From NCBI RefSeq assembly GCF_030028105.1, contig NC_092398.1, forward strand, positions 25,001,649 to 25,065,648: a stretch of DNA of 64,000 bases, given 5' to 3'. Shown one piece after another: positions 2,793 through 58,419 of this stretch. The notes under the pieces were generated by a model. It made no database searches. It saw only the letters and a program-made list of their open reading frames with translations, and had not been told where the DNA came from. Position 1 is the stretch's first letter; each line of letters opens with the position of its first letter. This DNA is from Mobula birostris. Taxonomy: Eukaryota. Both the position numbers and the translations under genes were made by a program.

Positions 2793-4780
2793 TCACACCA
2801 GGCGAGAGAATGGAGATTTCAACACCTCCCGCATCTGCTCCCTGAACTTCTTCTGGGTCAAGGCGTAAAGAGCCGTGTTTGTGCAGCAGCTCAGAAGCTG
2901 CAGCATGTAGCCCAGCTCCCTCATGGTCGAAGGTGGGAACAAGGCATACCTCAGATATGATAAACGAAAAAAATATGATCGTATCCACACAGTATGCACA
3001 ACAAAAACCACCCACAACACGATGAAATTCGCCGACACGACCAACAGTAAAATGAGCGACTTCCTCCGGCTTTGCATCTCCGGGTCTTTGGAGCCATCCC
3101 CATTGCTGTTATTCCGGAGTCTCCTCCGAGATCTGCTCGCCACTACCACGTGTCTGATGGTCAAAGCATTGAGCAGCAGAACGACCACAAACGGGATCAC
3201 AGGCGTCAGAAAGAAGCTGCAAGACTCGACTACTGTCCATGCAACTGAGAACAGAACACCGTCTCTTCCGTGGCAAAACCAAGGGACGTTATTAAACTGG
3301 TAGCGTCCTGAGAGCAAAAAATACCAGAAAATGTTCTTTAAACAGCTCAGGGCGGCCACAGTCCACAGAACAACAGCCGCGGTTCTCTCGGTGCAGTATT
3401 TAGCTTTCAGATTCTGGTAGCGAATAGCCACGAATCGGTCGAAGGTGAACATGACGGTGAACCAGACGGAGCAGTCGTTGACTGTGTAACGTAGGACGGC
3501 GTGGATATTACACACGGGGATGTTCATCAGGAATATAAACGCTCCCCAAAAAACAATAGGAATCTGCCTCAATACCAGGTCAAAGACAACAACGAGAAGA
3601 TCCGCCATTGCCATGGCCATCAAGTAACGAGCGACGCCTTTCGAAAGACCGCACTTTCCCTGGGACAGGACCACAATCGTCAGCACGTTCACTATTGGGA
3701 TTGAAAGAAACACAAGCATGTTTGTGGGCAAGGAATAATGTCAGCACAGTCACAGACAGAAAGTATAGAAACATGTTTTTGAACCCAGAATGGAAGACTG
3801 CAGTTTTCCAGCATCAGCGATGTCTGCAGGTGACGAGGATTATAGCTCAGTGAAGTCGACAAAGAACTGGAAAATAACGTCACAACGCCAAACAACGAAC
3901 AGCTGAGAAAATGTGCTCTCGGATTTCGGTGAAGATGGATTTGAAATAGGGCTCGAAATTGGTCATTGAATTGGAATTGCTTTACTATTACGGAAGTGGC
4001 ATCACAAGGGTACAGGGAAACACGCGTCTCCACAATATGCATACAGATCAATTCTTTACTCAGTGCTTTGAGGCGTGACGTAATATCAGCTCAGGCTCTC
4101 CACTTCTTCTGCCGGTCTTTTAAATTTATACAATATTTCGGAAGCCATCCATTTTATACTGCAGTCCAAATTGGGAGTTCGGTATCTAAAGCTGCAAGGG
4201 AGGCTTACTCAGTTGAAAATTTTAAACGCCAGCTCAGAAGATCTTTATTTAACCTTGATTTTAAAAGGAATTATTTTGTCTGCTCTTTTCATGTTATTTC
4301 TGTTTGTATTATAAAAGCACATTAAAACTTCGCCTATTTGGAAAGTGCTCTAATTATTATTATTATTATTATTATTGTTGCTGTTTTTGTTGTTGTGATT
4401 GTTGTTGTTTAAAGAAAAAAAACAGGGAGATAAATGTTATTGACCGAGTCTGTCAATGTATTACAGGATCATCATCAAAAGTTCAGTTAGTGAGGACGAT
4501 GGACTGCGTTAACCGGAAAATATCATTAAATTGCAAACTATCAAATCTGTTTACAGGAACCCGTGATCACTGCTTCTCCTTCTCTGGTCAGCAACTTACC
4601 GGGAAATGCAACCAAAGCGAGAAGGGGATAGTAGATGGGCTGAATTGTCCGGAGTAAATACCAGATCCGTCTGTCTGCTTGTATCCAAGGGTCATTCGAA
4701 AAAATATAGGGAGCCAGGCTGAAGACACCCTTCTCTGTCCCTGGAACATTCCATGTTCCTATTTCTCGTTCCTGAACCAT
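2793..4780 (-). CDS. Two-exon rhodopsin-class GPCR, GPR139/GPR142-like, 359 aa; exon 1 4780-4600, exon 2 3691-2793
   Basis: Exon 1 (181 nt, MVQERE...IYYPLLALVAFP) ends CCC G|gtaag. The acceptor is caatag|TG AAC at 3691. The joined CDS is 1080 nt and in frame. It has seven hydrophobic segments, TM2 AMADL, TM3 FDRF, ECL2 PWFC and TM7 NTALY. TM1 IYYPLLALVAFPVNVLTIVVLS resembles GPR139 [22 protein letters not shown] (recalled). No symbol given because one-to-one orthology is not shown. Confidence 0.92.
4353..4390. repeat. (ATT)n/(TTG)n microsatellite in the GPCR intron; length differs in unit 2
   Basis: attattatt... followed by gttgtt. Confidence 0.8.
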
Positions 4781-6184
4781 TGCCCGTCACCGTTCCCAGA
4801 TTCCAGTCGGTGACCGGCGATTCTCACGCTGCACATGTGACAGTTCACGTAAAATTCCACTTTGATATTCGCAGTTCCCCAATTTTTGTCTTCCGCTGTC
4901 GAGCCACTGCGGTCTGTGTGTGACGGAGGTGTTGTTCTCGCTAACACTATGAAACTTAATCGAAAGGAGCAATTTTAAATAGAGCTGCTAATCCCCGAGT
5001 GAGACAACCAGGCTCCATACGGGCTGACGTTAATTAACAAACATCTACGGTTAACCCCTTTGGATCCGGATCGCGGGTGCCAAAGGTAAAACGAATTATT
5101 AAACAGGGTGGTGATGTCTAGGATATATGTCCACCGATCTCGGACATTGGTTCTGCATTATCTTGCAGGAGACAGAATAGCCTGCAAGCACGTACCATTT
5201 GGCTCAGTAACAGCTTCAATCACGACATTATTAAAATATTCAACCCTTCCCCCTGACGATTAGATGGACTCTTGATATTGCAATCTGCCTCACTCTGACT
5301 TTGCAATTTGTTGTTCCCTTGCGCCGCACCTTCTCTGTAACTGCAGCACTTTATTCTGCATTCTGTCATTGTATGACCCGGAAATCAATGCACTGAGGCA
5401 ATCATTCTTTTTTTTTTTGAATGAGGAGTGTGTAAAACAAGGTTGTTTTCTTTTCCCAGCATCGACAAATACAATGAAGTCCCGTGTACCATCAGTGTCC
5501 CACCAGGCAAGATGCTGCGCAGTGTCCTCACCAGGACCAGCAGTATCTAAAACAGTTACTTTCTCCAGACAGTAAGGTTGATCGACACTTATACCGACCA
5601 ACACATTCCACCAGCTCCCTCTACCATCCAGCACCACAACTTTATCATTTCCTATCAGTAAACATGTGAACAGCCCTTAGAGTCACGTTGTAGACATATC
5701 AATCTCTGAATATGAACTATATATGTATTTATATTCATTGTCCTTTTTATTACTGTGCTCTTTCCCCTATTGTGTTTTTTGGCGCTGCAATGGATCCGGA
5801 GTAACAACTGTTTCGTTCTCCTTTGCGCTTGTGTAATGGAAATAATACTGAACAATTCTGAATCTTGAATAATAAACCCATTTACTAATTGAGCACTCTG
5901 CAGTGTGATGGACCAATCGGTTAGAGAGCGGCTTGCAGGTCTGATGAAAGGCTCAGAGGGGATCCTTTCTTTCGACGGGAGGAGGCTGATGGAAACCTTG
6001 CAACTTTGCTCCAGCTAATCTGACGTCACTGCGTCGGCGATGAAGGAGTGGTTCATGTTGTATCGGATGAGTGACAATTCGGAAATTATGCGGTCGAAAT
6101 TGCTTTATTTATGAAAGAGATTTGGACCAAATCTGTATTAAAGTTCAACATATATTAAATCCCGTTTAAACGCCCATCCACTCG

Positions 6185-6640
6185 ACTGAAACAATGACAA
6201 CAAACACAGACTGTTGGAGGAGCTCGGCAGATCAGGCAGCCTATGTGGAAGTGAATAAACAGTGGACGTTTCCGGTCGAGAACTTTCATCTGGACCGAAG
6301 ATGAAGCAGGCACACGCCAGAAGAAATGGTGAGGGAGGGGATAAGAAATACAGACCGGTATGAGATACTTGTAGCCAAGTGAGCGGGTAAATGGGTGGGT
6401 GGGGAAGAGGGATGAAGTAAAGACGTTGTCGTTGATATTTGGAAAAAATAAGAGCAAGAGAAGAAGGAATCTGATAAGAGAGGGGAATAGACCATAGGGG
6501 AAATTGAAGGAGGTGGTCACAAGGGGGAGGTGATCTGCTTGTGAGGGAATGAAGGAAGAGTGGTGTCAGAATGGATAATTGAAGAAAAGGGAAGGGGAGG
6601 GGAGAAAATTATCGGAAAACATTAAAAAATTGACATTTTT
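6185..6640 (-). mobile_element. Second probable Penelope-like remnant, inverted (unit-2 copy ~33222-33677)
   Basis: Minus strand ccagatgaaagttctcgaccggaaacgtccactgtttatt, after a CT-rich tract. Confidence 0.45.
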
Positions 6641-7693
6641 CTTTTTATGCACCTACCATATCAAAAATATTTCCACGATTAAACCGGTTAGTACATCTGA
6701 TGTGCTGCGTTTGGATCACATCGCAGGAAAATATAAGTAAGCCTACCAATATTTCGTCATAACCTGCAACCCAACAGATTGCCCAGAGATTCTCCTCCGC
6801 AATGCTTTGCATCCTCCTGTACAACGGTGACCAGAATTACCCACAGTACTCTACAAGCGGGCAACGTAATGTTATGCACATATCTTCATTATGATGCTAT
6901 AATTTGTGGGTTCAATACCTCACCCTGGGTCCCTTTCACTTTCCAGTTTTACCCTTTATACTCACAGGTACGCCCTGTCCTTCGCCTGTTGATCACTATG
7001 TTAACACTCTCTCACTCGCCGTCTCTTCTTTCTGTTCGACTGCTGCTAGTTGTCGACGAAATGTCTGGATATTATCCCTGCTCTAGTTTATGGGCACAAC
7101 GCTGTGAACCTTCATCGTTATTCGCGCCTGTGTTTCCTTTTCTTACAATTCTCCACCCTCTCTATCCTTACCCTCTCTCCTTGTCCCTGACTCTCACTCT
7201 CTCTCTCTCTCTAGCTGTGCTCCAGACCCCCTTGCTGTGTTGGCATCCATTGTGCGCACACCAGACAGCAGTACAAATGGGGCTCTATGTTGAGGGATGT
7301 GTGCACACAGAACAAACAAGCGCAAAGCGGCGGTGTAGAGAGGACTCAAGTGCACTGGGGACAGTTTTCGGATGTGTCTGTACAGACCGGACCAGTTAAC
7401 GATGAAATTTCTTTTGCCACACCTGCCATTGGAAAACATACTTCCGTGATTAATCCCGTCTGTGCATTTCATCAACTGATGTATTTCCTTCGGGTCACCT
7501 TGCACGGAAGTTACGATCAACCTGTCCAATAGAGAGAGTCGTGGTGTAATAGAAAAGTACAGCACAGGAGAAGACCCTTCGGCCAATCTAGTCTGAGCCG
7601 AACCAATTAAACTTCTACTCCCCTCGACCTACACGCCTATCACAGCCCTCCCTAACCCAGGTATCCGATTATCTATCAAAGCGTCTCTCAGAC

Positions 7694-8851
7694 CAGAGGT
7701 TCGCAACCATCGGGCCGCAGATCGGTACCGGGCCGCAAAGCATGTGCTACCGGGCCGCGAGGAAACCTTTCCTCATTCCCTGTCACGTACTTTTGAGCCA
7801 TTACGCATGCGAGGTCATTAACCGCGCTTCATCCATCTCACCGCGGGAAGGAGATCAATTCCCCGAGCTTGCAAATGACGGCAGGCTGAAAAGTATGTTT
7901 GACATAACATCTCAGCCAGCATTCTAGATCAAAGTCAAGGCTAGATAACCTGAGATAGCCACGAAAGCACTGAAAACGCTGCTTCCATTTCCAAACTATC
8001 TCTGCGAAGCAGGCTTTTCTGCAATGAATGCAACGAAAACTAAATTGCGGAATAGACTGGACATAAGTAACCCCCTTCGAGTACCGCTGTCTCCCATCAC
8101 TCCTCGATAGGACCGTCTCCTTGCAGGGAAACAAGCGCAGGGCTCCCAATGATTCACCGATATTGGCGTGTTGCAATGATTCTATATGTTCATACGGGGA
8201 AAATATGTGTTGTGTGTTTAATATCCAAACGTTACTTAGAATGTTATGATGCTATTGACTTATATAACCACATAACAATTACAGCACAGAAACAAACTAC
8301 CTCTGCCCTTCTCGTCCGTGCTGAACGCTTACCCTCACCTAGTCCCAACGTTCAGCACTCAGCCCACAACCTGTCCTTTCCTGTCCATATATCTATGCAT
8401 TTTTTCTATAAATGATAATATCGAACCTGCCTCTACCACTTCTACTGGAATCTCCTTCAACACTTACTTCAAGCTCCCCTGTCCTCCCCTGATAACTGAT
8501 TTATCACTATATTCATGCGAGGAAAATATGCGCTGTGTGTTTAATATTAAATTCGCCAGATAAACCCTTTTAGAAAGGAAATTGAGTGTATTAGGCACTT
8601 ATTACCGATATTCCGGATGTGGTTCCCCCGCACCGCCGAACAGAATCGCCAAAAGCAATTTGTAGGGGAAAAAATCGTCACGTAAACGCATTCGCACTGG
8701 TGCCCGCACAAGGCTTCATTCTCATTGAAGTCTTTTTCGGGTAAACACAACGTATTTGTCTGCTACTCTTGTCCGTTGCCAATCCTACTCCCCACCACCA
8801 CTCCAGCCCCCCAGTCGGCCGGTCCGCAGTGCAAAAATTTGGGGACCCCTG
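7694..8851 (+). mobile_element. Non-autonomous Charlie-type hAT with a transposase C-terminal remnant and an embedded CR1 3' tail
   Basis: Ends CAGAGGTTCGCAAC / TTTGGGGACCCCTG. YLCEAGFSAMNATKTKLRNRLD at ~8000-8060. CR1 tail on the minus strand at ~8290-8500. No matching TSD found. Confidence 0.8.
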
Positions 8852-9169
8852 ATCGTTTGCAGTGCTTTGCTGTTTGAAAGAAGATTCCAGGAAGTGAGTG
8901 CAAGCTCGAACGACCTTAAAGTGAAACAGTTTAGAGGTGGTGCGCCAGCCAATGATAGACTCCATTTCGCCGATTAAAGCATCGAGGAAGATTGAAATCA
9001 AGGCGAGTGCAGAAAGTGAGTGAGGGTTTAAAACTGACTGCTGTTTGATCGCAGGGACGGATCTCTCTGTTGTCAGATGAGTTGTGTAGTACCTTTCACT
9101 CACTGTTACCGGAGGGTAGGCCTCTGTGCTTCAGTGGTCTCTCTATCTCCATCTCTTGACGTTGGTCAG

Positions 9170-11836
9170 AGGACATAAGCCGGGTAGCTGTGGAATCGAT
9201 ATGGGTAGGGCTGCGTAACACTAAGGGGCAGAAGACGATGGTGGGAGTTGTGTACAGGCCACCTAACAGTAGTAGTGAGGTCGGAGATGGTATTAAACAG
9301 GAAATTAGAAATGTGTGCAATAAAGGAACAGCAGTTACAATGGGTGACTTCAATCTACATGTAGATTGGGTGAACCAAATTGGTAAAGGTGCTGAGGAAG
9401 AGGATTTCTTGGAATGTATGCGGGATGGTTTTTTGAGCCAAAATGTCGAGGAACCAACTGGAGAGCAGGCTATTCTGGACTGGGTTCTGAGCAATGAGGA
9501 AGGGTTAATTAGCAATCTTGTCGTGAGAGGCCCTTTGGGTAAGAGTGACCATAATATGGTGGAATTCTTCATTAAGATGGAGAGTGACATAGTTAATTCA
9601 GAAACAAAGCTTCTGAATTTAAGGAGGGGTAACTTTGAAGGTATGAGACGTGAATTCGCTAAGATAGACTGGCAAATGACACTTAAAGGATTGACGGTGG
9701 ATATGCAATGGCAAGCATTTAAAGGTTGCATGGATGAACTACAACAATTGTTCATCCCAGTTTGGCAAAAGAATAAATCAAGGAAGGTAGTGCACCCGTG
9801 GCTGACAAGAGAAATTAGGATAGTATCAATTCCAAAGAAGAAGCATACAAATTAGCCAGAAAAAGTAGCTCACCTGAGGACTGGGAAAAATTCAGAGTTC
9901 AGCAGAGGAGGACAAAGGGCTTAATTAGGAAGGGGAAAAAAGATTATGAGAGAAAACTGGCAGGGAACATAAAAACTGACTGTAAAAGCTTTTATAGATA
10001 TGCAAAAAGGAAAAGACTGGTAAAGACAAATGTAGGTCCCCTACAGACAGCAACAGGTGAAATGATTATGGGGAGCAAAGACATGGCAGACCAATTGAAT
10101 AATTACTTTGGTTCTGTTTTCACTAAGGAGGACATAAATAATCTTCCAGAAATAGTAGGGGACAGAGGATCTAGTGAGATGGAGGAACTGAGCGAAATAC
10201 ATGTTAGTAGGGAAGTGGTGTGAGGCAAATTGAAGGGATTAAAGGCAGATAAATCCGCAGGGCCAGATGATCTGCATCCCAGAGTGCTTCAGGAATTAGC
10301 CCAAGAAATAGTGGATGCATTAGTGATAATTTTTCAAAACTCTTCAGATTCTGGACTAGTTCTTGAGGATTGGAGGGTGGTTAATGTAACCTCACTTTTT
10401 AAAAAAGCAGGGAGAGAGAAACTGGGGAATTATAGACCGGTTAGCCTAACATCGGTGGTGGGGAAAATGCTAGAGTCAGTTACCAAAGATGAGATAACAG
10501 CACATTTGGAGAGTGGTGAAATCATCGGACAAAGTTAGCATGGATTTGTGAAAGGAAAATCATGTCTGATGAATCTCATAGAATTTTTTGAGGATGTAAC
10601 TAGTAGAGTGGACAGGGGGAGAACCAGTGCATGTGGAATATTTGGATTTTCAAAAGGCTTTTGACAAGGTCCCACACAGGAGATTAGTGTGCAAACTTAA
10701 AGCACACGGTATTGGGGGTAAGGTATTGACGTGGATGGAGAATTGGTTAGCAGACAGGAAGCAAAGAGTGGGAATAAACGGGACCTTTTCAGAATGGCAG
10801 GCGGTGACTAGTGGGTACCGCAAGGCTCAGTGCTCGGACCCCAGTTGTTTACAATATATATTAATGACTTGGATGAGGGAATTAAATGCAGCATCTCCAA
10901 GTTTGCGGATGACACGAAGCTGGGTGGCAGTGTTAGCTGTGAGGAGGATGCTAAGAGAATGCGGAGTGACTTGGATAGGTTGGGTGAGTGGGCAAATTCA
11001 TGGCAGATGCAATTTAATGTGGATAAATGTGAAGTTATCCACTTTGGTGGCAAAAATAGGAAAACAGATTATTATCTGAATGGTGGCCGATTAGGAAAAG
11101 GGGAGGTGCAACGAGACCTGGGTGTCATTATACACCAGTCATTGAAAGTGGGCATGCAGGTACAGCAGGCGGTGAAAAAGGCGAATGGTATGCTGGCATT
11201 TATAGCGAGAGGATTCGAGTACAGTAGCATGGTGGTACTACTGCAGTTGTACAAGGCCTTGGTGAGACCACACCTGGAGTCTTGTGTGCAGTTTTGGTCC
11301 CCTAATCTGAGGAAAGATAACCTTGCCATAGAGGGAGTACAAAGAAGGTTCACCAGATTGATTCTTGGGATGGCAGGACTTTCATATGAAGAAAGACTGG
11401 ATGAACTGGGCTTGTACTCGTTGAAATTTAGAAGATTGAGGAGGTATCTGATTGAAACGTATAAAATCCTAAAGGGATTGGACAGGCTAGATGCAGGAAG
11501 ATTGTTCCCGATGTTGGGGAAGTCCAGAACAAGGGGTCACAGTTTGAGAATAAAGGGGAAGCCTTTTAGGACCGAGATTAGGAAAAACTTCTTCACACAG
11601 AGAGTGGTGAATCTGTGGAATTCTCTGCCACAGGAAACAGTTGAGGCCAGTTCATTGGCTATATTTAAGAGGGAGTGAGATATGGCCCTTGTGGCTACGG
11701 GGATCAGGGGGTATGGAGGGAAGGCTGGGGCGGGTTTCTGAGTTGGATGATCAGCCATGATCATAATAAATGGCGGTGCAGGCTCGAAGGGCCGAATGGC
11801 CTACTCCTGCATTAATTTACTATGTTTCTATGTTTC
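9170..11836 (+). mobile_element. 5'-truncated CR1 LINE (endonuclease + RT pseudogene, 3' UTR, (ctatgttt)n tail)
   Basis: ESIWV..VGVVYRPP..MGDFN..SDHN endonuclease, YRPVSLTS, DFQKAFDKV and KFADDTKL. Stops and frameshifts (e.g. 9853, 10221, 10536) are shared with unit 2. Confidence 0.93.
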
Positions 11837-12228
11837 GATGATATTACTGGGGCTCTGCATTTATGCACTGGACGATGAAGTTGTTCGGTCTTATGATGTT
11901 TATATTCTCTGTTTTCGTCAGTTATTTCTCGTTATTGTGTGGCGTGTTTTGTTACTTCTTTGTGTGAGCGAAAGGAGTTTGGAGTTTGATGTTCTTGTTC
12001 TTGACAGTTTTTTTTGTGCGCGTGTAGGTTTTGATGTTTATCTTTGAATTATTTCCATGCATTTCTTTGTACTGTGGCTATCTGGAGAAGCCAAATCTCA
12101 GAGTTGCACACTGAGTACATAATTTAATAATAAATGAACCTTTGAACGATTTTTGATGCCTGACGGGGCGATTTGTGTATCTCAGAGAATGTTGAGCTCA
12201 TGGGATTATCAGGCACGAGTCTCTAGAG

Positions 12229-13419: not shown

Positions 13420-13451
13420 GCCAAAATAAAATTCTAGCGAGTGGAGGGGAA

Positions 13452-13694
13452 TCTGCACGTAAACGCATGTGCACTGGTGCCCGCGCAAGGCTTCATGGAC
13501 ATTGAAGTCTTTCTCGGGGTAAACTCAACGTATTTGAGTGCTATTCTTGTCCGTTGGCAACCCTACTCCCCACAACCACCCGCGCCCCACCCACTCCCCA
13601 CCCCCCCCCCCCCCCGCCGCCCTCGGCCGGTCCGCAAGAATATTGTCAATATTAAACCGGTCCACAGTGCAAAAAAAATGTTTGGGGACCCCTG
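13452..13694 (+). mobile_element. Terminal fragment of a third copy of the same hAT family (unit-2 equivalent ~40488-40722)
   Basis: Homologous to ~8680-8851 and ends TTTGGGGACCCCTG. Confidence 0.7.
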
Positions 13695-15820: not shown

Positions 15821-16058
15821 TCTCACTGAGCAAAAACAGCCTCGTCCCTTCCTTCAGTTTTTTTGGAACCCAACCTTGTTATTCTATTTTTTTCACTTCT
15901 GAGTTGTTTTGAACATTTATACTAATCTTTTTATGTCTTTGCTCCGACCTTCACGTCACAGAAGTCAGTGATGATAAATCTGATTTGAGAATAGTGCAGA
16001 GACGGTTTCCCAGTTTAACCCACATTGATGAATCTCTGTAAGCCTCTCAGCCACTTGC

Positions 16059-16172: not shown

Positions 16173-16219
16173 CTGAGGAGAAAACGTTGGAGGTTCTGTC
16201 GTTGTGTTAAGTCATGTTT

Positions 16220-20603: not shown

Positions 20604-20719
20604 ACGAGGAGCATTTGATGGGTCTGGGCCTGTACTCACTGTAGTTTTGAAGAATGAACGGAGATCCTATGAAATATTAGAAGTCCTAGATAGAGTGGAT
20701 AAGGAGAGGATGTTTCCTA

Positions 20720-25472: not shown

Positions 25473-25473
25473 T

Positions 25474-25506
<33 letters not shown>

Positions 25507-43086: not shown

Positions 43087-43200
43087 CCTTTGACGTGCAG
43101 CAGTACAAGATTCCAGTCACCACCATTGCGCACAGCCCGAGTATCCCCAGGACAGCTCCAACAATCATCAAAGCTTCATTCTCAACCAGTGCGTTGTGTT
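43087..43200 (-). other. Second copy of the putative TM exon
   Basis: Appears identical to 16059-16172, including the GC donor. Confidence 0.7.
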
Positions 43201-46200
43201 CTGAGGAGAAAACGTTGGAGGTTCTGTCGTTGTGTTAAGTCATGTTTCATATCATATCATTAAGTTCAAGATTAATTTATTATCAGAGTACTTACGTATA
43301 TGTCAACCTATGCAACTCTGAGGTTCATTTTCCTGTTGGCATACTGGGCAAGTCTATAGAGTAGTAACTAGAACGGGATCAATGAACGATCAACTTGACT
43401 GCAGAAGACAACAAACTGTGCCACTGTGCTGTGCAATAAATAAATAGCATCAAATAACCAGAAACTGCGATAAAGAGTCCTTAAAGAGAGATCATTGGTT
43501 GTAGGAGCATCTTAATGGATGGACAAGTGAGTGTAATCAAGAGCCCGATGGCTGAGGGGTCGTAACTGATTCTGAAATTGGTGGTGTGAGTCCCGAGGCT
43601 CCTGTACCTTCCACTTGATGGCGGCAGCGAGAGAAGTGTATGGCCTGGGTGGTGGGGATCTCTGACAAAGAATACTGCTTTCTTACAATGTTGTTTCATG
43701 TAGATGTGATCAATGGTTGGGAGGGCTTCACCCATGATGTACTGTACCAAATCCACTATCTTTTGTAGGATTTTCCACTCAAAGGCATTGGTGTTTCCAT
43801 ACCAGTCTGTAATGCAGCCAGTCAATTCACATCTAGAAAAGTTTGTCAAAGTTTCAGTGTCAGGTCAAATCTCCAGTGACTTCTAAGGAAGTAGGGACAA
43901 GTCTACTTCCTTAAGAGGTGACTTGTTGTGAGCATCTCCCATGCGAATCATCAAATATTCCCATTGTTCAGGACTACAACAGCTGAAATGCGTGGTCACG
44001 GCTATGGATACTTCAGTAAATAACACATTTCACAACGTATCCCAAAGATACTAAACCTGATTCTGTTTTGTAAAGGCATGTTCAATGTACGAGGAGCAGG
44101 GGCAGCGCTAAGGTGGTGCTCGCTGGGGCTATAGCATCAGCAGAAATTGCAATAGCTCCACCATAGCACCACCAAGAAATTAACTGCAGCTGCTTTGCTT
44201 TCTCTGTATAGTTTTTAAAACAGCTTGTTTCCCCAGTTGATCTAATGAAACAGCACCCCCAATTACCGTAGCAACCACGCAGCAATATAGTTATAAACTC
44301 TCTCAGATCCACTCTACACTTCTGCTTATTCGTTCGTTGTCAATGTCTTGCAGTTGCGTTCCTCAGATCAGTTAAGCTGATCTAAGGTCACTTAAGGTGG
44401 TGACGTCACTCACTCTCCCTCACGCGAGAGATTGATAGTATACATCCAGGCGCAGATCCGTTGTCTCGCGAGACTAACAGATGCCACACGCGCACACTGT
44501 GCTTTTACAAGCGAGCGTGGGCCTGGCACGTGCATTATTTTGGCCGGCGTGAAAAATTGATCGACTTTTAATCAGAAAACGACCTCATCCAGAGGAATCA
44601 GTGGTGTCTCTGCCTGAGCATGTCTCAATTGAAAGTGACATGCAGAAAGAAGTAAGTGGGGATGAGGACGACAGCAGCTCATCGAAGGAGTGTGAGGGCG
44701 AAGTAGAGGAACAGGAAATGGAGCGGGATTCGGAAGAGAACGTGGATGAAGCTGCTCTTAGTGTGAGTGGAAATACTGTTAGCGGTGATAGCCAGCAGCC
44801 TGAGGAAAGACCCCGTCGGCCAGCATTGAAAAAGTACCCTTCGCACAGTTTGGCAATCACAAAGGAGTATTCGTAGCTGGTTTGACCTGTACTCCTTGCT
44901 GGAAAATTCAATCACAAAAGATGTTACATTCTGCTTCGCCTGCAGACATTTCCTGTGTGGAGGACCTGGGTTTTATTCTGAGTCTACCTTCACTGTCACA
45001 GATTACCGCAACTGGCGGAAAGCTACAACAGCTTTCAAAACCCACCACCTAAGTGCAGCTCATAAGTTGGCTATGGAGGCATGGGCCGAATTCAGATTGA
45101 GAAAACAAGACGGTTCAAGATTGGGAAATATGCTTGATAAAAGACATGCAAACAATGTCCAAGGAAGTCGTGAGTATATGTGAGCAGTGGTTGAGTCTCT
45201 ACGCTATCCTGCGTGCCAAGGCATTACCCAGCGAGGATACCTGGAGAATGATGGATCTGGCAATAGGGGAAACTTTGTTGAGTCGCTCAGTGTAATTGGG
45301 AAGTTTGATAAGACTGTAGCTAAAAAGAAGAATAGAGGACAATCCTGGAAATGCAAAAAACACCCACCACCATATCCAAAATGAAATTATGAGTATTACG
45401 GCAGATATGGTCGGACGTCAAATAAGTGCAGAAATCAAGGAGGCTGGATATTTTGCCAGCATGGTGGTTGAAAGTAAGGACTTGAGTAAAAAGGAGCAAG
45501 TATCAGTGCTGGTGCGGTATTTGAATAAAGAAACAGTGGTTGAAGAATTCTTGCACTTCTCTCCAGCAGAAGGGTTGGACGCAGAGTCGCTTCTTAAAAG
45601 CATTGAACAGACGCTCGCCCAGTGTGTAATTGATAAGAACGCGTGTATAGGTCAGTGTTATGACGGGGCGGCAGTGATGTCCGGGTGCAATAACGGGGTA
45701 CAAGAGAGGCATTATATATACACTGCCACGCTCACAGACTTAACCTTGGTTTAGTGGATGTTGTGAGCAATGTACCAGAAGCGGGTGAGTTTTTTTGAAA
45801 CTGTGCAGCTGCTTTGCAACTTCTTTTCAAACTCTGTTGCCCACGATCTTTTCATGAAGAAACACAGAGAATTGGAATCAGCTGCACAGCCGTGGAGTTG
45901 AAGAAATTGCCAGATACACACTGGGCATGGCGGTATACAGCTTTGTGGGCTATAAGGAAATCACTCTCCGCCATTCTAGCTACACTACAGGATATTATGG
46001 GTCACCAAATGCACGGAGGAAAACGGAGGCTAGAGCTTTAAGTGGACTGATTGACGCGCAGTTTGCTTTACTTCTCACTCTGTTTGAGGATTTATTTCGA
46101 GTCACTAAGTTCATGTCAGACCAGCTACAATCTCCCAGTTTGGAGCTTTCATCCGCTGTGGACTTGGCTCAGTCTGTTATCGATGCACTCTCAGCAAAAC

Positions 46201-47542
46201 GGAGAGAGGAATCATGGAGTGAAATTCAGACAAGAGCTAGGGACCTGTGCGTCAAGGTCAGTATACAGAGCAGAGCACATGAAAGGAGACGGGCCCAGCC
46301 ACCCCGCCGCCTGCATCATTTTGTTGTTGAGGCCCGAACTGAACGCACACCTGTCACATCCTATGATGACCTTCGCAGCCACTGTTTCTATCCAGTTATA
46401 GACAGACTTCTGACTGAAATGAAAAGACGTTCTCAATTGAGACTGGGGGTGTTCTGACTGGAGTCTTGGCATTGACTCCCAAACATAAGTTCTTCCTAGA
46501 CAAGAATTGTCTTTGGCCAATGGCTCAATACTATGGAGTGACTGAAGTGAACCTGACTGCAGAGCTACATCAGGTTCGACGTCTGCTGGAAACAAAACAA
46601 AAGGAAGGACAGACAATGAATGACACAGTGGAATTTCTAGCTCTAATGAGACCCGACGGCGATGCATTTATAGATCTATACAAACTAATCTGCATATCAC
46701 TGACTCTGCCTGTTACATCTGCCTCATGCGAACGGAGTTTCTCTTGCCTCAGACGCGTCAAAAACTACTTAAGGAACAGCAGCGGCGATGCTCGGAACAG
46801 CAACTTGGTTCTGTTGGCCATAAACAGCCGGAGGACCAAAGCACGTGACATCCAGAAAATCATTGATGCTTTCGCCACCAATCACAACAACAGACGGATT
46901 TTGCTTGTCTGAAAATATTAATGGTGAGTGCAGTTGCTTTTTTAAAAATTTGGGCCAAGACTAATGCTGATTATTATTATTATTTTGTGGTGGATACCTC
47001 ATAATCCTTATGTTTCCTGCAGATCCTAAAATATTACATTCACTGCTATTAAGCCTACTTGTTTTACTTCGACTTCCAAACGGCGATTCTGTTGATTTTT
47101 GTTTTAAATTCGGTAGCCGAACTAATTGAGGTATTCCATGGTCAGGGTACGATTTGTCCAACGCCTCGTCAAGCCTTGCATCTGTCGTTTTCCTTATTTG
47201 ACTTTAATAACGGTGTATCTTTTAGCATTGCTGTCTATGTAATGCGAATAGCAGTGGGTTCGTTTTGTGTTTTCACTTGAAAAGCACGCATTTGACGCTG
47301 ATTGCGGGATTGGTGCGTGATTCACGTTGTCCGCTGTTGCTCGGATACTGTTTGTTTTTTTTGTTTATGCTCCGTGTAGCCCAGGTTGTCCTCGATGCCG
47401 TGTGACACTGTAACAGTTCACTTCCAGATTAGATCTATCAATTGCTTTTGCTTGTGAATCAATAGAGGCATTTACAGTAGGCACATAATGCTTGAAACTG
47501 ACTTTTTAACGCCACGCGTCTGGCCTTGGGAAAACAAATTAT

Positions 47543-47829
47543 TGTAGCGGTGTGCTACACACAGCGCTAGAATAACCACACGGAGTCGGTGAGTTAGAGT
47601 TGCGATGAAATAGATTTATTCAAACTTCGCGGTCTGCTTTTAAAGCCTTCCCATTCCCGCCCGCCCTGGGGCGGGACTGCTGTGGGGAATGCATTTTCCC
47701 AGACCCTTTCTGTGCGCGGGATTTTCCCCCTGCTGGTGAAGGTGGCCTGGCGCCCTTTCTGGTGCCGGCCCTCTGCCTACGCGCGCTGTTGTGAGCCGGT
47801 TCGTGTGCGCTAGAGAGTGGGTCGCCACA
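47543..47829 (-). repeat. 3' LTR (287 bp)
   Basis: tgtagcgg...gtcgccaca. I counted 12 mismatches against the other LTR (~96% identity). Confidence 0.95.
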
Positions 47830-47832
47830 TAA

Positions 47833-47846
47833 CCCCCCCCCACCCC
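47833..47846 (-). promoter_or_regulatory. Polypurine tract
   Basis: G-rich ggggtggggggggg run on the minus strand just before the 3' LTR. Confidence 0.8.
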
Positions 47847-47849
47847 AGA

Positions 47850-50800
47850 ACCGGCGATACCTCCCCCAATGTCCACCGTCTGGGTCAGCCTCTGTTTGGG
47901 AAGTCTGCCCGTGCGCCGAGGTGCCTGAGCCTGGACCGGCTGTGCCAATTCCACATGGGCCGGTTTGAGTCGGTCCACCGTGAAAACCTCCTCTCTCCCC
48001 CCAACGTCTAGCACGAACGTGGACCCGTTGTTCCTGGTCACCTTAAACGGCCCCTCGTAGGGCCGCTGTAGCGGTGCCCGGTGTCCGCCCCGTCGTACAA
48101 AAAGAAACTCACAGTTCTGCAGGTCTTTGGGTACGCAGGTCGGGCTCTGTCCGTGCTGTGAAATGGGGATGGGAGCCAGGTTACCGAGCCTCTCATATAG
48201 TCTGTCCAGGACTGCTGCGGGTTTTTCCTCTTGCCCCCTTGGGGCTGGTATGAACTCTCCTGGGACTACCAGGGGTGCGCCGTACACCAACTCAGCCGAC
48301 GAGGTGTGCAGATCCTCTTTGGGCGCCGTGCGGATTCCGAGCAGGACCCAGAGAAGTTTGTCCACCCAGTTAGGCCCTCCAGGCGGGCCATGAGAGCCGA
48401 CTTCAGGTGACGGTGGAAACGCTCCACTAGTCCGTTCGACTGTGGGTGGTAGGCAGTTGTGTGGTGTAGCTGTGATCCTAAAAGGTTGGCCATAGCCGAC
48501 CACATGCTGGAGGTGAACTGGGCGCCCCTGTCGGAGGTAATGTGGGCCGGTACCCCGAAGCGGGCTACCCAGGTTGTGATCAGTGCTCGGGCGCAGGATT
48601 CGGAGGCGGTGTTGGTGAACGAGACTGCCTCTGGCCATCTGGTGAACCGGTCTATCATAGTTAGGAGATACCGCGCTCCTCGCGACACTGGCAGGGGCCC
48701 CACGATATCCACATGGATGTGGTCGAACCTCCGGCGGGTGAGTTCGAACTGCTACGGCGGAGCCTTGGTGTGCCGCTGCACCTTGGCCGTTTGGCACTGC
48801 ATGCACGTTTTGGCCCATTCCCTGACCTGTTTACGAAGCCCATGCCACACGAACCTGTTGGCGACCAGCCGGATGGTTGTCCTGATGGAGGGGTGCGCTA
48901 AGTTGTGAATGGATTCGAAAACCCGCCGGCGCCAGGCTGCTGGGACGACGGGGCGGGGTTGGCCGGTAGCTACGTCACATAGTAGGGTCCTCTCACCTGG
49001 GCCTACGGGGAGGTCTTGGAGCTGCAAACTGGAGACTGCAGTCCTGTAACTGGGGATCTCAGCGTCTCCCTGCTGTGCCTCTGCCAGCGCTGCATAGTCC
49101 ACCCTCTGGGATAGGGCCTGTATGGTAGGTCTGGATAGTGCGTCTGCCACAACGTTGCCCTTTCCAGAGACATGCCGGATGACCGTCGTGTGCTCGGAGA
49201 TGTAGGACAGATGTCGCTGCTAGCGGGACGACCAGGGGTCGGACACCTTCGTGAACGCAAAGGTAAGCGGTTTGTGGTCTGTGAACGCGGTGAAGGGCCT
49301 AAGAAGTACCTGAAATGCCGGATTGCCAGGTATAGTGCCAATAGCTCCCCGTCGAAAGCACTGTATTTGAGTTCAGGTGGTCGTACGTGTTTGCTGAAGA
49401 ACACCAGGGGTTGCCAGCGACCCTCGATGAGTTGTTCCAGCACTCCACCGACTGCTGTGTTGGATGCGTCCACCGTGAGGGCAGTAGGAACGTCCGTTCT
49501 GGAGTGCACTAGCATCACGGCGTTTGCCAAGACTTCTTTGGTTTTAACGAAAGCGGTTGCGACCTCTTCGGTCCAGGTAATGTCCTTGCCCTTACCCGAC
49601 ATTAGAGTGAACAGGGGGCGCATGGTTCGGGCTGCTGAGGGGAGGAAACGGTGGTAGAAATTCACTATACCCACGAATTCCTGCAAGCTTTTGATTGTGT
49701 TGGGTCGGGGGAAAGTTGCGGACTGCGTCTACCTTGGCGGGCAGCGGTGTTGCCCCGTCTTTAGTAATCCTGTGGCCCAGGAAGTCGATGGTATCGAGTC
49801 CGAACTGGCATTTGGCTGGGTTGATTGCAAGGCCGAATTCGCTCAGGCGGGAGTAGAGCTGGCGGAGGTGGAACAGATGCTCCTGCCGACTACTGCTGGC
49901 TATGAGGATGTCGTCCAAATAGATGAATGCAAAGTCCAGGTCGCGTCCCACTGCGTCCATTAACCGCTGGAAAGTCTGTGCGGCATTCTTTAGACCAAAC
50001 GGCATTCGGAGGAATTCGAAAAGTCCGAACGGGGTGATAAGTGCTATTTTGGGGATGTCGTCCGGATGTACAGGGATTTGATGGTATCCCCGGACGAGGT
50101 CTACCTTGGAAAAGATCCTTGCGCCGTGTAGGTTTGCTGCGAAGTCTTGAATGTGTGGCACAGGGTAGCGGTCTGTCGTTGTAGCCTCGTTCAGCCTGCG
50201 GTAGTCACCGCATGGTCTCCAGCCCCACGTTGCCTTGGGCACCATGTGCAGGGGGGAGGCCCATGGGCTGTCGGACCGTCGTATGATCCCCAATTTCTCC
50301 ATCTTCTTGAACTCCTCCTTCGCCAGTCGGAGCTTGTCCGGGGGAAGCCTTCGAGCACGGGCATGGAGGGGTGGTCCCTGGGTCGGGATGTGGTGCCGTA
50401 CTCCGTGTCTGGGCATGGCTGCCGTGAACTGCGGTGTCAGTACTGATGGGAAATCCGCCAGGACCCTGGTGAATTCATCGTTGGACAGTGTGATGGAGTC
50501 CAGGTGTGGGGCTGGCAACTTTGCTTCACCCAGGGAGAACGTTTGAAAAGTCTTGGTGTGGACGAGTCGCTTCCCTTGCAGGTCGACCAGCAGGCTGTGG
50601 GCTCGCAGAAAATCCGCCCCCAGGAGTGGTTGGGCCACGGAGGCCAGTGTGAAGTCCCACGTGAACCGGCTGGAGCTGAACTGTAGCCGCACCGTGCGGG
50701 TGCCATAGGTTCGTATTGTGCTGCCATTTGCGGCCCTCAGGGTGGGTCCCGGTTCTCTGTTGCGGGTGTCGTAACTCGTTGGAGGTAAAACACTGATCTC

Positions 50801-51542
50801 CGCTCCGGTGTCGACCAAAACTCGGCGTCCCGACTGCTTGTCCCAGACGTACAGGAGGCTGTCCTGATGGCCAGCCGCCGTAGCGATCGGCGGCGGCTGG
50901 GCCTTGGCGTTTCCCGGGAATTTGCAGGGTGGTCTACAGCGGCGGGCCTCTGTGCCCCACCACTGGTGGTAGAAGCACCGTTGTTCATTGGGCTCTGCTG
51001 CCGGGCCTGGTCTGGTCTGCCATTGGGCACGCGGCTCGGTGATCTGTGCGACGGATGCCCCTCTCTCCTTCTTGGCATTCCACAGCACATCTGCTCAGGC
51101 CGCCACCTCCCGGGGGTCGCAGCAGGCGTATGTCCTCGGGCAGTTGCTCTAGGAACGCCTGCTCAAACATGAGGCAGAGTTTGTGTCCTTCAGCCAGGGC
51201 CAGCATTTCGTTCATTAATGCAGATGGCGGCCTGTCTCCCAAACCTTCGAGGTGCATTAAGCAGGCAGCTCGTTCGCGCCCTGAGAGTCCAAAAGTCCTT
51301 ATGAGCAGGGCTTTGAATGCTGTGCATTTGCCGTTCTCCGGAGGCGACTGTATAAACTCCTCAACTTGTGCAGCAGTCTCTTGGTCGAGAGAGCTCAGCA
51401 CGTAGTAGTAACGAGTGGACTCCGAGGTTATCTGCCGAATGCGGAATTGTGCTTCTGCCTGTTCCAACCAATGACGGGGTTTCCGCGGCCAAAAGCCCGG
51501 CAATTGTAACAAAACTGCGTGAAAAAATGCAGCGTCGGTCAT
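47850..51542 (-). pseudogene. Gypsy gag-pol (gag, protease, RT, RNase H, integrase) with several frameshifts and at least one stop
   Basis: ORF pieces 50985-51602, 49592-51088, 49003-49686, 48752-49150, 48266-48712 and 47640-48818 tile the domains in different frames. The gag ATG is at 51542 (MTDAA..LPGFWP). Confidence 0.9.
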
Positions 51543-51566
51543 CTCTGACCCAAATATCGTTTGGGC

Positions 51567-51580
51567 CGTCGGGGTCACCA
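51567..51580 (-). promoter_or_regulatory. Primer-binding site complementary to the tRNA-Trp 3' end
   Basis: Minus-strand TGGTGACCCCGACG lies 2 nt from the LTR end and matches the 3' end of tRNA-Trp(CCA), ...CGUCGGGGUCACCA. Confidence 0.88.
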
Positions 51581-51582
51581 AA

Positions 51583-51869
51583 TGTAGCGGTGTGCTACAC
51601 ACAGCGCTAGGATAACCACACGGAGTCGGTGAGTTAGAGTTGCGATGAAAGAGATTTATTCAAACTTCGCGGCCTGCTTTTAAAGCCTTCCCATTCCCGC
51701 CCTCCCTGGGGCGGGATTGCTGTGGGGAATGCATATTCCCAGACCCTTTCTGCGCGCGGGATTTTCCCCCTGCTGGTGAAGATGGCCTGGCGCCCTTTCT
51801 GGTGCCGGCCCTCCGCCTTCGCGCGCTGTTGTGAGCCGGTTCGTGTGCACTAGAAAGTGGGTCGCCACA
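51583..51869 (-). repeat. 5' LTR (287 bp)
   Basis: Direct repeat of 47543-47829, adjacent to the PBS on the minus strand. Confidence 0.95.
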
Positions 51870-52075
51870 TTACCATACAGTGCATCCCTCAGCACCATTA
51901 CTGAATCATTCAGCCCCGCCGTAGCACCAGCAAGAAAAAATCTCTGGTGCCGTCATTGACGAGGAGCATTTTTTGGGTCTGGGCCTGTACTCACTGGAGT
52001 TTTGAAGAATGAAGGGGGATCCTATGAAATATTGGAAGTCTTAGATAGAGTGGATAAGGAGAGAATGTTTCCTAT

Positions 52076-53226
52076 ACCTGGGCCTTAGCACTCATTCTGC
52101 AGCTGGATCTTCAACTTCCTCACAGACAGAACCCAGGCTGTAAAAATAGAGGACAAGCTCTCCTCTACAATCACTCTGAGCACCGGTGCCCCACAAGGCT
52201 GTGTACTCAGCACCCTGCTATACTCACTCTACACCCATGATTGTGTAGCCAAGTTTCCATCAAACTCAATAGATAAGTTTGCTGATGACACAACAATTGT
52301 AGGCCGTATCTCGGGTAATGATGAGTTTGAATACAGAGAGGAAATTAAGAACCTGGTGGCATGGTGCGAAGACAATAACCTATCCCTCAACGGCAGCAAG
52401 ACGAAAGAATTAGTTGTTGAATTCGGAAGGAGTAGCGGACTGCACGACCCAATTTACATCGGTGGTGCGCAAGTGGAACAGGTCAAAAGCTTTAAGTTCT
52501 TCGAGATCAATATCACAAATAACCTGACTTGGTCCAACCAAGCAGAGTCCACTGCCAAGAAGGCCCACCAGCGCTTTACTTCCTGAGAAAACTAAAGAAA
52601 TTTGGCCTGTCTCCTAAAACCCTCACTAATTTTTATAGATGCACCGTAGAAAGCATTGTTCTAGGGTGCATCACAACCTGGTATGGAAGTTGTCCTGTCC
52701 AAGACCAAAAGAAGCTGCAGAAGATCGTGAACACACCGCAGCGCATCACACAAACCAATCTTTCATCCTTGGACTCACTTTACACCGCACGCTGTCTGAG
52801 CAGTTCTGCCGGGATAATCAAGGACATGACCCACCCAGCCAATACACTTTTTTCGTCCCTGTTCCCTCCGGGAGAAGATTCAGGAGCTTGAAGACTCATA
52901 CGGCTAGATTTGGGAACAGCTTCCTTCCAACTGTGATAAGACTGCTGAACGGATCCTGACCCGGATCTGGGCCGTACCCTCCAAATATCCGGACCTGCCT
53001 CTCGGTTTTTTTGCACTACCTTACTTCCCATTTTTCTATTTTCTATTTATGATTTATAATTTAAATTTTTAATATTTACTCATTTTAACTATTTTTAATA
53101 TTTTAAATATTTAATATTTGTGATCCAGGGAGTGTGAAGCGCAGAATCAAATATCGCTGTGATGGTTTTACGTTCTAGTACCTATTGTTTGGCGACAATA
53201 AAGTATAAAGTATAAGTATAAGTATA
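52076..53226 (+). mobile_element. Unit-2 copy of the Rex1/Babar LINE
   Basis: Same insertion point and tail; more diverged than the first halves of the units. Confidence 0.85.
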
Positions 53227-53951
53227 GGAGGGGAGTCCAGGACAAGAGAGCACTGCCTTATAATAGAAAGGTGTCCATTTAAAACAGAGATGAGGAGGAA
53301 TTTCTTTAGCCGCAGGGTGGTGAATCTGCAGAATTTGTTGAGTTCTGTTCATTCGGGCTCTGTAATTATTTAAGACGCATGCGCACTCTCCCAGTTATGC
53401 GCGTGCACGCGGAAGGAAAAAGAGGAACTGTGGGATGTAAAGGTGGCGGCCCTTGGGTATTGAACGGAGACATTCAAAGTAAAGTGGTTTAAACAAAAGG
53501 AAAATGTGTCTTTGCTGTTTGGCCGTTATCAGTGGTAGCGGAGGACGGTTACGATCTATCGACCTCTGGGATATGGGCCCTGCGCAATATTGAGTATGTT
53601 TGAAGCAGAGGTCGATAGGTTCTTGATTGGAAAGAACATCAAAGGTTACGGGGAGAAGTCAGGAGACTGGGGTTGAGAGAGACAATGAATCTGTCACGAT
53701 GGAATCCCAGAGTAGACTTGATGAGCCAAATGGCCCAATTCTGCTCTTAGGGCTTATGGTTTTATGGTATCTAAGCTGTCTGACTTGATTCTCACAATTG
53801 ACAGCAGAGAGGATGAGAGAAGTCTTGAGCAGTTGGGACTTGCTTCTGGACAGAAACGGGCCACGATGGATTTTCTGTCAAGTTGACATCAGTGAGAATA
53901 CGGTGGTGTTGACGGGGTCAGGCGACATTTCTCCAACTTGCCCGTTCTTAC

Positions 53952-54194
53952 CTAGAGGTATCATGAGCTTCCCACTCACAGCCTCGTGTTCCATCTGACA
54001 CTCCTAACTTGAAAGGTTCCATTGCTTTGAGGGACAACGTTGGTCGTGTCTGATCCATTGTCAGCGACTTTTCCGTTTCTGACCCAATGCACTTTAATGT
54101 CCCGGGGAAGAAGTTCTTGGCCGTGCACACCGGATATATTTAGCCCCGTTTCTTCTGAGTCAAGGCTCTGGTACGGGTAGGAGCTGTGAAGGAA
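53952..54194 (-). pseudogene. Second, further decayed C1-set exon
   Basis: Shares the TAA and both frameshifts with copy 1 and keeps the canonical Trp (HWVRNG). The acceptor is mutated AG>AA (54195). A 37-nt deletion between gaca microhomologies removes the second Cys. Confidence 0.78.
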
Positions 54195-58415: not shown

Positions 58416-58419
58416 AGAG

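What the first reader, a model, noticed from the sequence alone, without database searches (positions are those of the whole stretch)
2793..54194. Repeated two-gene module: an orphan GPR139-like GPCR co-duplicated with an MHC-like C1+TM gene
Seen: each unit has, on the same strand and in the same order, a C1-set exon, a TM exon and an intact GPCR. Known: cartilaginous-fish annotations contain many 'GPR139-like' paralogs of unknown function, and sharks have several non-classical MHC class I and W-category lineages. In rodents, class Ib M10/M1 molecules partner vomeronasal V2R GPCRs. Inference: this may be a linked receptor/MHC-like pair that expanded as one unit, with the MHC-like partner decayed in these two units. 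Simple hitch-hiking in a duplicated block is the null explanation.
Basis: partly seen in the sequence, partly recalled or inferred. Interest (0 to 1): 0.75.

Follow-up and report, generated by a model that had tools for sequence, protein, structure and literature searches.

The report
GPCR tandem repeat carrying dead MHC exons
A 27-kb block of ray DNA has been copied head-to-tail; each copy holds one working orphan receptor gene and a broken two-exon leftover of a known "W-category" MHC gene, so the MHC piece is a passenger, not a partner.

Summary
Each unit of a ~27-kb tandem duplication carries three things on the minus strand, in this order: a C1-set exon, a transmembrane exon and an intact GPCR gene.

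Three refinements:
- **The MHC-like piece.** It is a relic of a W-category MHC beta-chain gene (WB, Nds5-like subgroup; Okamura 2021). Only the beta2 and CP/TM exons remain. Leader, beta1, cytoplasmic exons and a WA partner were not found. Both copies share one in-frame stop and one 1-nt frameshift, and each has a private lesion as well. The relic was therefore already dead when these two units diverged.
- **The GPCR.** It keeps 98 of 100 family-conserved residues. It belongs to a very large shark-and-ray family auto-named "probable GPR139", yet it is barely closer to human GPR139 than to muscarinic receptors.
- **Linkage elsewhere.** WB loci in sawfish, two skates and a catshark show no such GPCR within 10 kb. 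A skate GPCR locus shows no C1 exon.

A functional receptor/MHC pairing is not supported.

The scan already reached the same reading on the same array 129 kb upstream (s1-145236). This is ordinary: new members of known kinds.

The parts
2793..3691 (-). GPCR exon 2, unit 1 (second half of TM1 through the C-terminus, including the stop codon)
   Evidence: ORF; Pfam 7tm_1 E 2.4e-15; acceptor ...aatag|TG in phase 1; 95% identical to the Mobula hypostoma 'probable GPR139' P0001.
4600..4780 (-). GPCR exon 1, unit 1 (ATG, extracellular N-terminus, first half of TM1)
   Evidence: tblastn with the N-terminus of Hemitrygon P0006: 75% identity over 60 aa, E 1e-27. ATG at 4780 and donor G|GTAAGT in phase 1. 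A skate paralogue shows the same two-exon split at residue 60/61.
16059..16172 (-). Relic W-category beta-chain (WB) exon 4, unit 1: connecting peptide, TM and first cytoplasmic residues; open, phase 1-1, GC donor
   Evidence: Sequence. tblastn to WB proteins: 69% to P0121 (E 5e-14), 74% to P0154, 77% to P0155.
22612..22880 (-). Relic WB exon 3, unit 1 (beta2, C1-set Ig domain), 269 nt. It has an in-frame TAA, a 1-nt frameshift at FFP|RDIK, and the conserved Trp changed to Cys
   Evidence: frames and alignment; Pfam C1-set; 66-71% identical to Pristis WB P0121; best solved-structure matches are MHC class I alpha3, FcRn and CD1.
29830..30728 (-). GPCR exon 2, unit 2
   Evidence: it differs from unit 1 at three nucleotides (two synonymous; V131A).
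31639..31819 (-). GPCR exon 1, unit 2
   Evidence: one difference from unit 1 (Q34P).
43087..43200 (-). Relic WB exon 4 (CP/TM), unit 2
   Evidence: its translation is identical to that of unit 1.
53952..54183 (-). Relic WB exon 3 (beta2 C1-set), unit 2. It has the same stop and frameshift as unit 1, plus a private 37-bp deletion that removes the second Ig cysteine region
1..27034 (.). Tandem unit 1 (27,035-bp period). Its filler is LINE EN/RT fragments at 9190-11678 (+), a hAT transposase ORF at 18897-19883 (+), and inverted 1.1-kb repeats at 7693-8788 and 12313-13420
   Evidence: Self-BLAST; Pfam Exo_endo_phos_2, RVT_1 and Dimer_Tnp_hAT.
27035..62826 (.). Tandem unit 2, lengthened by an LTR retrotransposon (47543-51874) and about 4.5 kb of extra sequence (54320-58872). 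A third unit begins near 62827

Best explanation
The window covers two and a bit units of a tandem segmental duplication, with a basic period of 27 kb, in a manta/devil-ray genome. The working cargo of each unit is one intact two-exon gene of 359 aa. It encodes a member of a very large shark-and-ray family of rhodopsin-class GPCRs that annotation pipelines label 'probable GPR139'. Upstream of it on the same strand, among LINE and hAT debris, each unit also carries the beta2 (C1-set) exon and the connecting-peptide/TM exon of a W-category MHC beta-chain (WB) gene. This is a relic: it lacks leader, beta1 and cytoplasmic exons, it has no WA partner, and it is broken by a stop and a frameshift common to both units. 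The inferred history is as follows. A duplication breakpoint, or an earlier deletion, truncated a WB gene lying next to the GPCR, on a chromosome that holds W-category genes. Unequal crossing-over then multiplied the whole block, so the dead exons were copied passively along with the receptor gene. Later exchange between units re-homogenised the GPCR-bearing 17.6 kb to 99.3% identity, while the part holding the C1 exon stayed at 90-97%. What is shown: the anatomy, the lesions, the family assignments and the identity mosaic. What is inferred: the order of events and unequal crossing-over as the mechanism.
For: - **Repeat architecture and identity steps:**
- **Relic identity:** in 1.8 billion representative proteins the best hits to the C1 piece are elasmobranch proteins of about 295 aa (P0121 71%, P0123 58%, P0129 51%). 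P0129 is the 'cloudy catshark WB_Nds5L_159K' sequence printed in the SI of Okamura et al. 2021.
- **TM exon:** it continues the same proteins at 69-77% identity.
- **Only two exons:** tblastn with nine WB proteins finds only exons 3 and 4. A C1 HMM finds one C1 exon per unit.
- **Lesions:** both units share the TAA and the 1-nt frameshift. Unit 1 has a private Trp-to-Cys change and unit 2 a private 37-bp deletion.
- **GPCR intact:** exon 1 and its splice sites; four nucleotide differences between copies; 98 of 100 family columns that are at least 95% conserved are kept; a skate paralogue has the same exon split.
- **No conserved linkage:** WB loci L001-L003 contain no GPCR by tblastn. Annotated WB neighbours are a C1-set gene (both skates and the catshark) or an FtsJ gene (sawfish). 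The skate GPCR locus L004 has no C1 or WB match.
Against: The linkage test reaches only 10 kb either side, whereas the relic here lies 11-18 kb from the GPCR. DNA of the nearest species' loci (Mobula hypostoma, Hypanus, Hemitrygon) was not retrievable. The ends of the array lie outside the window, so I could not check whether an end unit keeps the missing WB exons or whether any unit has an intact WB. No expression data could be consulted. The TM exon is still open, although 38 codons staying open by chance is unremarkable.
Confidence: 0.85

Rival explanations
1. Functional receptor/MHC-like pair. A WB-type molecule escorts or partners this GPCR, as M10/M1 class Ib molecules do for V2R receptors in rodents. 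The pair expanded as a unit, and the partner decayed only in these two copies.
For: The relic and the GPCR share strand and order in both units. W-category molecules have no known function (PMC8713811).
Against: Only two WB exons are present, with no WA partner. The stop and frameshift are shared by both units, so death preceded their divergence. No GPCR lies within 10 kb of intact WB genes in four species, and no C1 exon lies near a skate paralogue. An earlier scan note reports the same dead relic in units 129 kb upstream (s1-145236; that stretch was not re-checked here). From general knowledge, M10 genes are not genomically adjacent to V2R genes, so adjacency is not a hallmark of that system.
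Confidence: 0.04
2. Exapted relic. The dead WB exons survive because they now serve the GPCR gene, as an upstream non-coding exon, alternative promoter or enhancer, or as a lncRNA.
For: They lie on the same strand upstream of the GPCR. The TM exon keeps good splice signals and an open frame.
Against: The C1 exon diverges between units at about the local neutral rate and has acquired a 37-bp deletion in one unit. The TM exon sits in the recently homogenised segment, so its identity between units says nothing about constraint. No transcript evidence is available.
Confidence: 0.05
3. Assembly artefact. One locus was falsely duplicated by the assembler.
For: The first 17.6 kb of the two units are 99.3% identical.
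Against: The remainder differs by 3-10%. Unit 2 has an LTR retrotransposon, with a short duplicated target sequence, and a 4.5-kb insertion that unit 1 lacks. The relic exons carry different private lesions, and a third, 10%-diverged unit follows.
Confidence: 0.03

Closest known systems
W-category MHC beta chain (WB), Nds5-like subgroup (Okamura et al. 2021, PNAS; PMC8713811)
   Same: The C1 exon is 51-71% identical and the CP/TM exon 52-77% identical to ray and shark WB proteins, including a sequence printed in that paper's SI. It has a class I-like beta2 (best solved-structure matches are class I alpha3, FcRn and CD1). It lacks the class II Trp before the TFQ motif. Its TM is Gly-rich. Exon phases 1-1 are the same as in skate WB genes.
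   Different: Only exons 3 and 4 remain and the reading frame is broken. There is no leader, beta1 or cytoplasmic exon and no head-to-head WA partner. The intron between the two exons has swollen to 6.4 kb with transposon sequence, against 0.8-2.6 kb in skates and sawfish.
Elasmobranch 'probable G-protein coupled receptor 139' expansion (automatic NCBI names; no description found in the literature searched)
   Same: 59-95% identical to more than 100 annotated members from rays, skates and sharks. It shares the two-exon structure split inside TM1. It keeps 98 of 100 conserved family residues, including the family's DRF and NTxxY versions of the DRY and NPxxY motifs.
   Different: This is simply a further pair of near-identical tandem copies. 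The nearest annotated model (Mobula hypostoma P0001) starts at an internal Met and lacks exon 1.
Human GPR139 (solved structures 7VUG and others)
   Same: It is the top solved-structure match, covering the whole 7TM core. Both are rhodopsin-class receptors.
   Different: E is only 1e-6 (32 bits), essentially tied with muscarinic M4 (E 1.4e-6). The name is a best-hit label, not shown orthology.
Rodent V2R-M10/M1 receptor/class Ib MHC partnership
   Same: A GPCR and an MHC-family molecule are considered together.
   Different: In that system the MHC partner is intact and co-expressed. Here it is a two-exon pseudogene, and the adjacency is not seen in the other species examined.

Membership tests
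W-category MHC beta chain (WB) | Sequence groups with published WB sequences rather than with class I, class II or other C1-set proteins | tested here: met
   Top hits are P0121, P0123, P0129 and P0133, and P0129 matches 'cloudy_catshark_WB_Nds5L_159K' in the paper's SI. The hits ranked between these, from teleosts (eel, Ameca, Prochilodus), are 30-40% identical. No tree was built.
W-category MHC beta chain (WB) | Class II-type beta-chain gene: leader, beta1, beta2, CP/TM and cytoplasmic exons | tested here: not met
   Skate and sawfish WB genes show that exon set. In the window only the beta2 and CP/TM exons are detectable.
W-category MHC beta chain (WB) | Class I-like beta2: no Trp at the position where class II beta2 has its invariant Trp (position 61 in Okamura 2021) | tested here: met
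   The exon reads ...SNGTFQV... with Gly before the TFQ motif. The position was mapped through the conserved TFQ motif, not through the paper's own numbering.
W-category MHC beta chain (WB) | Paired head-to-head with a WA (alpha-chain) gene | tested here: not met
   A C1 HMM finds no second C1-set exon in 64 kb. Skate WB loci do have an upstream C1-set gene on the opposite strand.
W-category MHC beta chain (WB) | Open reading frame (functional gene) | tested here: not met
   Both units share a TAA and a 1-nt frameshift, and each has a further private lesion.
Elasmobranch 'probable GPR139' GPCR family | High identity to family members and retention of family-invariant residues | tested here: met
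   2122 proteins at E<=0.001, the best at 95% identity; 98 of 100 conserved columns are kept.
Elasmobranch 'probable GPR139' GPCR family | Two coding exons split within TM1 just before the conserved Asn | tested here: met
   A little skate paralogue has the same split, and the Hemitrygon gene has a matching span.
GPR139 proper (orthologue of the human gene) | Clearly closer to GPR139 than to other rhodopsin-class receptors | tested here: inconclusive
   GPR139 E 1.1e-6 against muscarinic M4 E 1.4e-6. No phylogeny was made.
Receptor/MHC escort pair (V2R-M10 type) | Intact MHC-family partner | tested here: not met
Receptor/MHC escort pair (V2R-M10 type) | Co-expression and physical association | not testable with these tools
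   No expression or interaction data are available here.

The most novel reading that the evidence does not exclude
The adjacency may not be wholly accidental. Members of this very large, undescribed shark-and-ray GPCR family may be preferentially embedded in immune-receptor regions; here that is a W-category MHC neighbourhood, and elsewhere in this genome, according to unchecked scan notes, it is beside TCR-beta V segments. That would hint at shared chromatin or regulatory control, or at an immune-related role for the family, with the dead WB exons marking where this array was born.
Probability: 0.07. Interest if true: 0.6.

Novelty: new member of a known kind. Interest (0 to 1): 0.22.

Why it matters
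As a candidate receptor/MHC partnership it does not stand up, so it need not be pursued on that ground. Three things are left:
- **A case study in misleading synteny.** Tandem amplification carries pseudogene fragments along and so creates an apparent "module".
- **A corrected gene model.** The GPCR has two exons and 359 aa. The automatic model in the sister species starts at an internal Met and lacks exon 1.
- **Another data point on the GPCR family.** Sharks and rays hold a very large family that is conserved in its core. I found no description of it in the literature searched. That family is the more interesting open question.

Tried and rejected
- **Missing WB exons.** I searched the window for leader, beta1 and cytoplasmic exons with nine WB proteins at a permissive threshold (E up to 10 with the first nine queries; E up to 1e-3 with the second set). 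Only noise came back, for example a 5-residue LHPTV match at E about 1 that lies in the wrong order.
- **A WA or second C1 exon.** A custom HMM found none.
- **A simple YxCxVxH motif scan.** It missed the exon because this copy reads YVCQMEH.
- **Orthologous loci.** Fetching DNA around the Mobula hypostoma, Hypanus and Hemitrygon genes failed because the files were too large; only gene lists came back.
- **Exact-product look-ups.** Look-up of the window's single-exon ORF and of P0133 found nothing on record.
- **A closer intact Mobula WB.** A word-indexed search with P0123 found none.
- **Rfam and tandem-repeat scans.** Both were empty.
- **Literature on the GPCR expansion.** Searches on GPR139 with cartilaginous fish, shark or skate terms, on 'GPR139-like', and on Mobula found no description.
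- **Selection on the GPCR copies.** I considered a dN/dS estimate, but four differences (two synonymous, two not) are too few.
- **Sequencing error as the cause of the C1 lesions.** Rejected, because the same lesions occur in two diverged copies.
Full report
**What is there**

Self-comparison of the window shows a head-to-tail duplication.
- Positions 1-20517 match 27035-47541 at 98.8% identity.
- The units stay colinear but are more diverged further on: 20511-22660 matches 51866-54000 at 93.8%, and 23075-27932 matches 58872-63714 at 88-90%.
- A third unit begins near 62827.
- Unit 1 has a 27,035-bp period. Unit 2 is longer because of an LTR retrotransposon and about 4.5 kb of extra sequence at 54320-58872.
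- The LTR element lies at 47543-51874. It has gag-like DUF7041, protease/RT and RNase H domains, 292-bp LTRs that are 95.5% identical, and a short duplicated target sequence.
- The filler between genes is transposon sequence: a LINE with endonuclease and RT fragments, a hAT transposase, and inverted 1.1-kb repeats.
- There are no N runs, no Rfam matches and no large tandem repeats.

**The GPCR**

They begin only ten residues before the conserved TM1 Asn, which is too short for a full TM1.

- Well-annotated relatives have an N-terminal region ending ...IQxIYYPLLAxVG.. just before that Asn.
- tblastn with those N-termini found the missing exon at 4600-4780 and 31639-31819. It is 75% identical over 60 residues to the Hemitrygon protein P0006, E 1e-27.
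- That exon has an ATG and a G|GTAAGT donor in phase 1. This fits the polypyrimidine-AG acceptor at 3692-3693.
- The spliced product is 359 aa. The two copies differ at four nucleotides, two synonymous and two not (Q34P, V131A).
- A little skate paralogue is split at the same residue. The Hemitrygon gene spans 1.9 kb for 364 aa, which is consistent with the same structure.
- Against 120 relatives, the protein keeps 98 of the 100 columns that are at least 95% conserved. These include the family's DRF and NTxxY forms of the DRY and NPxxY motifs and the TM3/ECL2 cysteines. The gene is therefore intact.

The family is very large. 2122 proteins reached E<=0.001, nearly all named 'probable G-protein coupled receptor 139', from rays, skates and sharks. 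The best is a Mobula hypostoma protein at 95% identity, so the window comes from a close relative. That Mobula model starts at an internal Met and lacks exon 1.

The name is only a best-hit label. Against solved structures, human GPR139 scores E 1.1e-6, level with muscarinic M4 at 1.4e-6. I found no paper describing this expansion.

**The MHC-like exons**

*The C1 exon.* It lies on the minus strand at 22612-22880.
- It has a CAG acceptor and a G|GTAAG donor, both in phase 1.
- It reads APTHTRALTQKKRG-stop-IYPVCTAKNFFP, then shifts frame by one base, then continues RDIKVHCVRNGEV...NGTFQVRSV...YVCQMEHEAVSGKLMIPL.
- It passes Pfam's C1-set threshold.
- Its best solved-structure matches are MHC class I alpha3, FcRn and CD1.

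*Nearest relatives.* A full HMMER pass over 1.8 billion representative proteins returned, as nearest relatives, elasmobranch proteins with a leader, one membrane-distal domain, this C1 domain, a TM and a Ser-rich tail.
- These are the partial Pristis model P0121 (227 aa, 71% identical), Amblyraja P0123 (58%), Scyliorhinus torazame P0129 (51%) and a shark protein, P0133 (46%).
- Their automatic names mix 'class I' and 'class II beta'.
- That mix is typical of the W-category MHC of Okamura et al. 2021, which has class II architecture with class I-type features.
- The paper's supplementary file prints these same sequences as WB_Nds5L. Its 'cloudy catshark WB_Nds5L_159K' is P0129, and great white and bullhead shark WB_Nds5L share the FFPRDIK, CQVEHE, GAVLGILG and DGLTKS motifs.

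- It has a CAG acceptor, 114 nt, phase 1-1 and a GC donor.
- It reads EHNALVENEALMIVGAVLGILGLCAMVVTGILYCCTSK.
- It continues the same WB proteins at 69-77% identity, E 5e-14. The two exons are therefore exons 3 and 4 of a WB gene.

**The relic is dead**

- **Exons are missing.** Skate and sawfish WB genes have leader, beta1, beta2, CP/TM and cytoplasmic exons within 10-13 kb. In the window, nine WB proteins detect only beta2 and CP/TM. A C1 HMM built from the hits finds exactly one C1 exon per unit, so there is no WA partner either.
- **The frame is broken.** Both units share the TAA and the 1-nt frameshift. Unit 1 has also lost the conserved Ig Trp (now Cys). Unit 2 has a 37-bp deletion that removes the second-cysteine region.

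**Timing**

The identity profile between units, per 1-kb bin, is as follows:

| Segment of unit 1 | Identity to unit 2 | Contents |
|---|---|---|
| 1 to about 17.6 kb | about 99.3% | GPCR, LINE, TM exon |
| 18-20.5 kb | about 96% | hAT ORF |
| 20.5-23 kb | 93-97% | C1 exon |
| 23-28 kb | about 90% | unit 3's start is also about 10% diverged from units 1 and 2 |

- The array is therefore not a single recent event. Older units have been partly re-homogenised by unequal exchange or conversion, with a breakpoint inside the hAT element. This agrees with note s1-146389.
- The shared lesions of the C1 exon lie in the older segment. The relic was therefore already broken when these units separated, unless conversion spread the lesions between them. 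It has been copied as dead weight.

**Is the linkage conserved?**

- DNA around intact or near-intact WB genes in Pristis, Amblyraja and Leucoraja (10 kb each side) contains no match to the GPCR.
- Their annotated neighbours are another C1-set gene upstream on the opposite strand, the expected WA (both skates), or an FtsJ gene (sawfish).
- The catshark WB is flanked by C1-set genes.
- Gene lists around three ray GPCRs show no neighbour within 10 kb.
- A 26-kb skate GPCR locus has no WB or C1 match.
- Caveats: the flanks are shorter than the 11-18 kb separation seen here, and DNA from the nearest species could not be fetched.

**Earlier scan notes (leads only)**

- The same array was examined 129 kb upstream (s1-145236), with the same verdict: dead W-category exons riding as passengers. 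The array would then span at least about 190 kb.
- Intact W-category genes are reported 316 kb and 3.6-3.9 Mb beyond this window on the same chromosome (s1-145064 and others). That would give a ready source for the truncated WB.
- I did not verify those stretches.

**Verdict**

- Both components are new members of known kinds: a W-category pseudogene fragment, and further copies of an annotated GPCR family that I found no description of.
- The only wider point is that this GPCR family is very large and unstudied, and that unchecked notes place it near immune loci in this genome.

Noticed in passing
window 4600-4780 and 31639-31819 (-): The nearest annotated protein (Mobula hypostoma 'probable GPR139', P0001) starts at an internal Met and lacks the 60-codon first exon found here. 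Several other family models carry spurious N-termini; P0029, for example, begins with transposon-like residues. Automatic models of this family are often wrong at the 5' end.
   Followed up: partly
window 2793-3691 (-), and the family alignment: Across 120 shark and ray relatives the family conserves DRF instead of DRY, and N-T-x-x-Y instead of NPxxY in TM7 (no proline). It also has an invariant SCCTNT motif and a basic RxRxRLR stretch in intracellular loop 3. This is an unusual signature for a rhodopsin-class receptor family with thousands of members.
   Followed up: no
window 17600-18050: Identity between units changes abruptly, from about 1 mismatch per 300 bp to about 1 per 25 bp, inside the hAT element. 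This is a likely breakpoint of unequal crossing-over or gene conversion.
   Followed up: yes
window 47543-51874 (-): An LTR retrotransposon is present only in unit 2. It has long open gag-like (DUF7041), protease/RT and RNase H ORFs and 292-bp LTRs that are 95.5% identical. That is about the same age as the divergence of the surrounding segment.
   Followed up: partly
window 18897-19883 (+) versus 45927-46457 (+): The hAT transposase C-terminal ORF is open for 328 codons in unit 1 but cut to 176 codons in unit 2.
   Followed up: no
window 7693-8788 and 12313-13420: Inverted 1.1-kb repeats, 86-87% identical, flank the LINE EN/RT fragment in each unit. They may be two copies of another transposon in opposite orientation.
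   Followed up: no
window 54320-58872: About 4.5 kb is present in unit 2 but not in unit 1, directly upstream (minus-strand sense) of the relic C1 exon. It contains a LINE-tail-like ORF at 55040-55207 (-).
   Followed up: no
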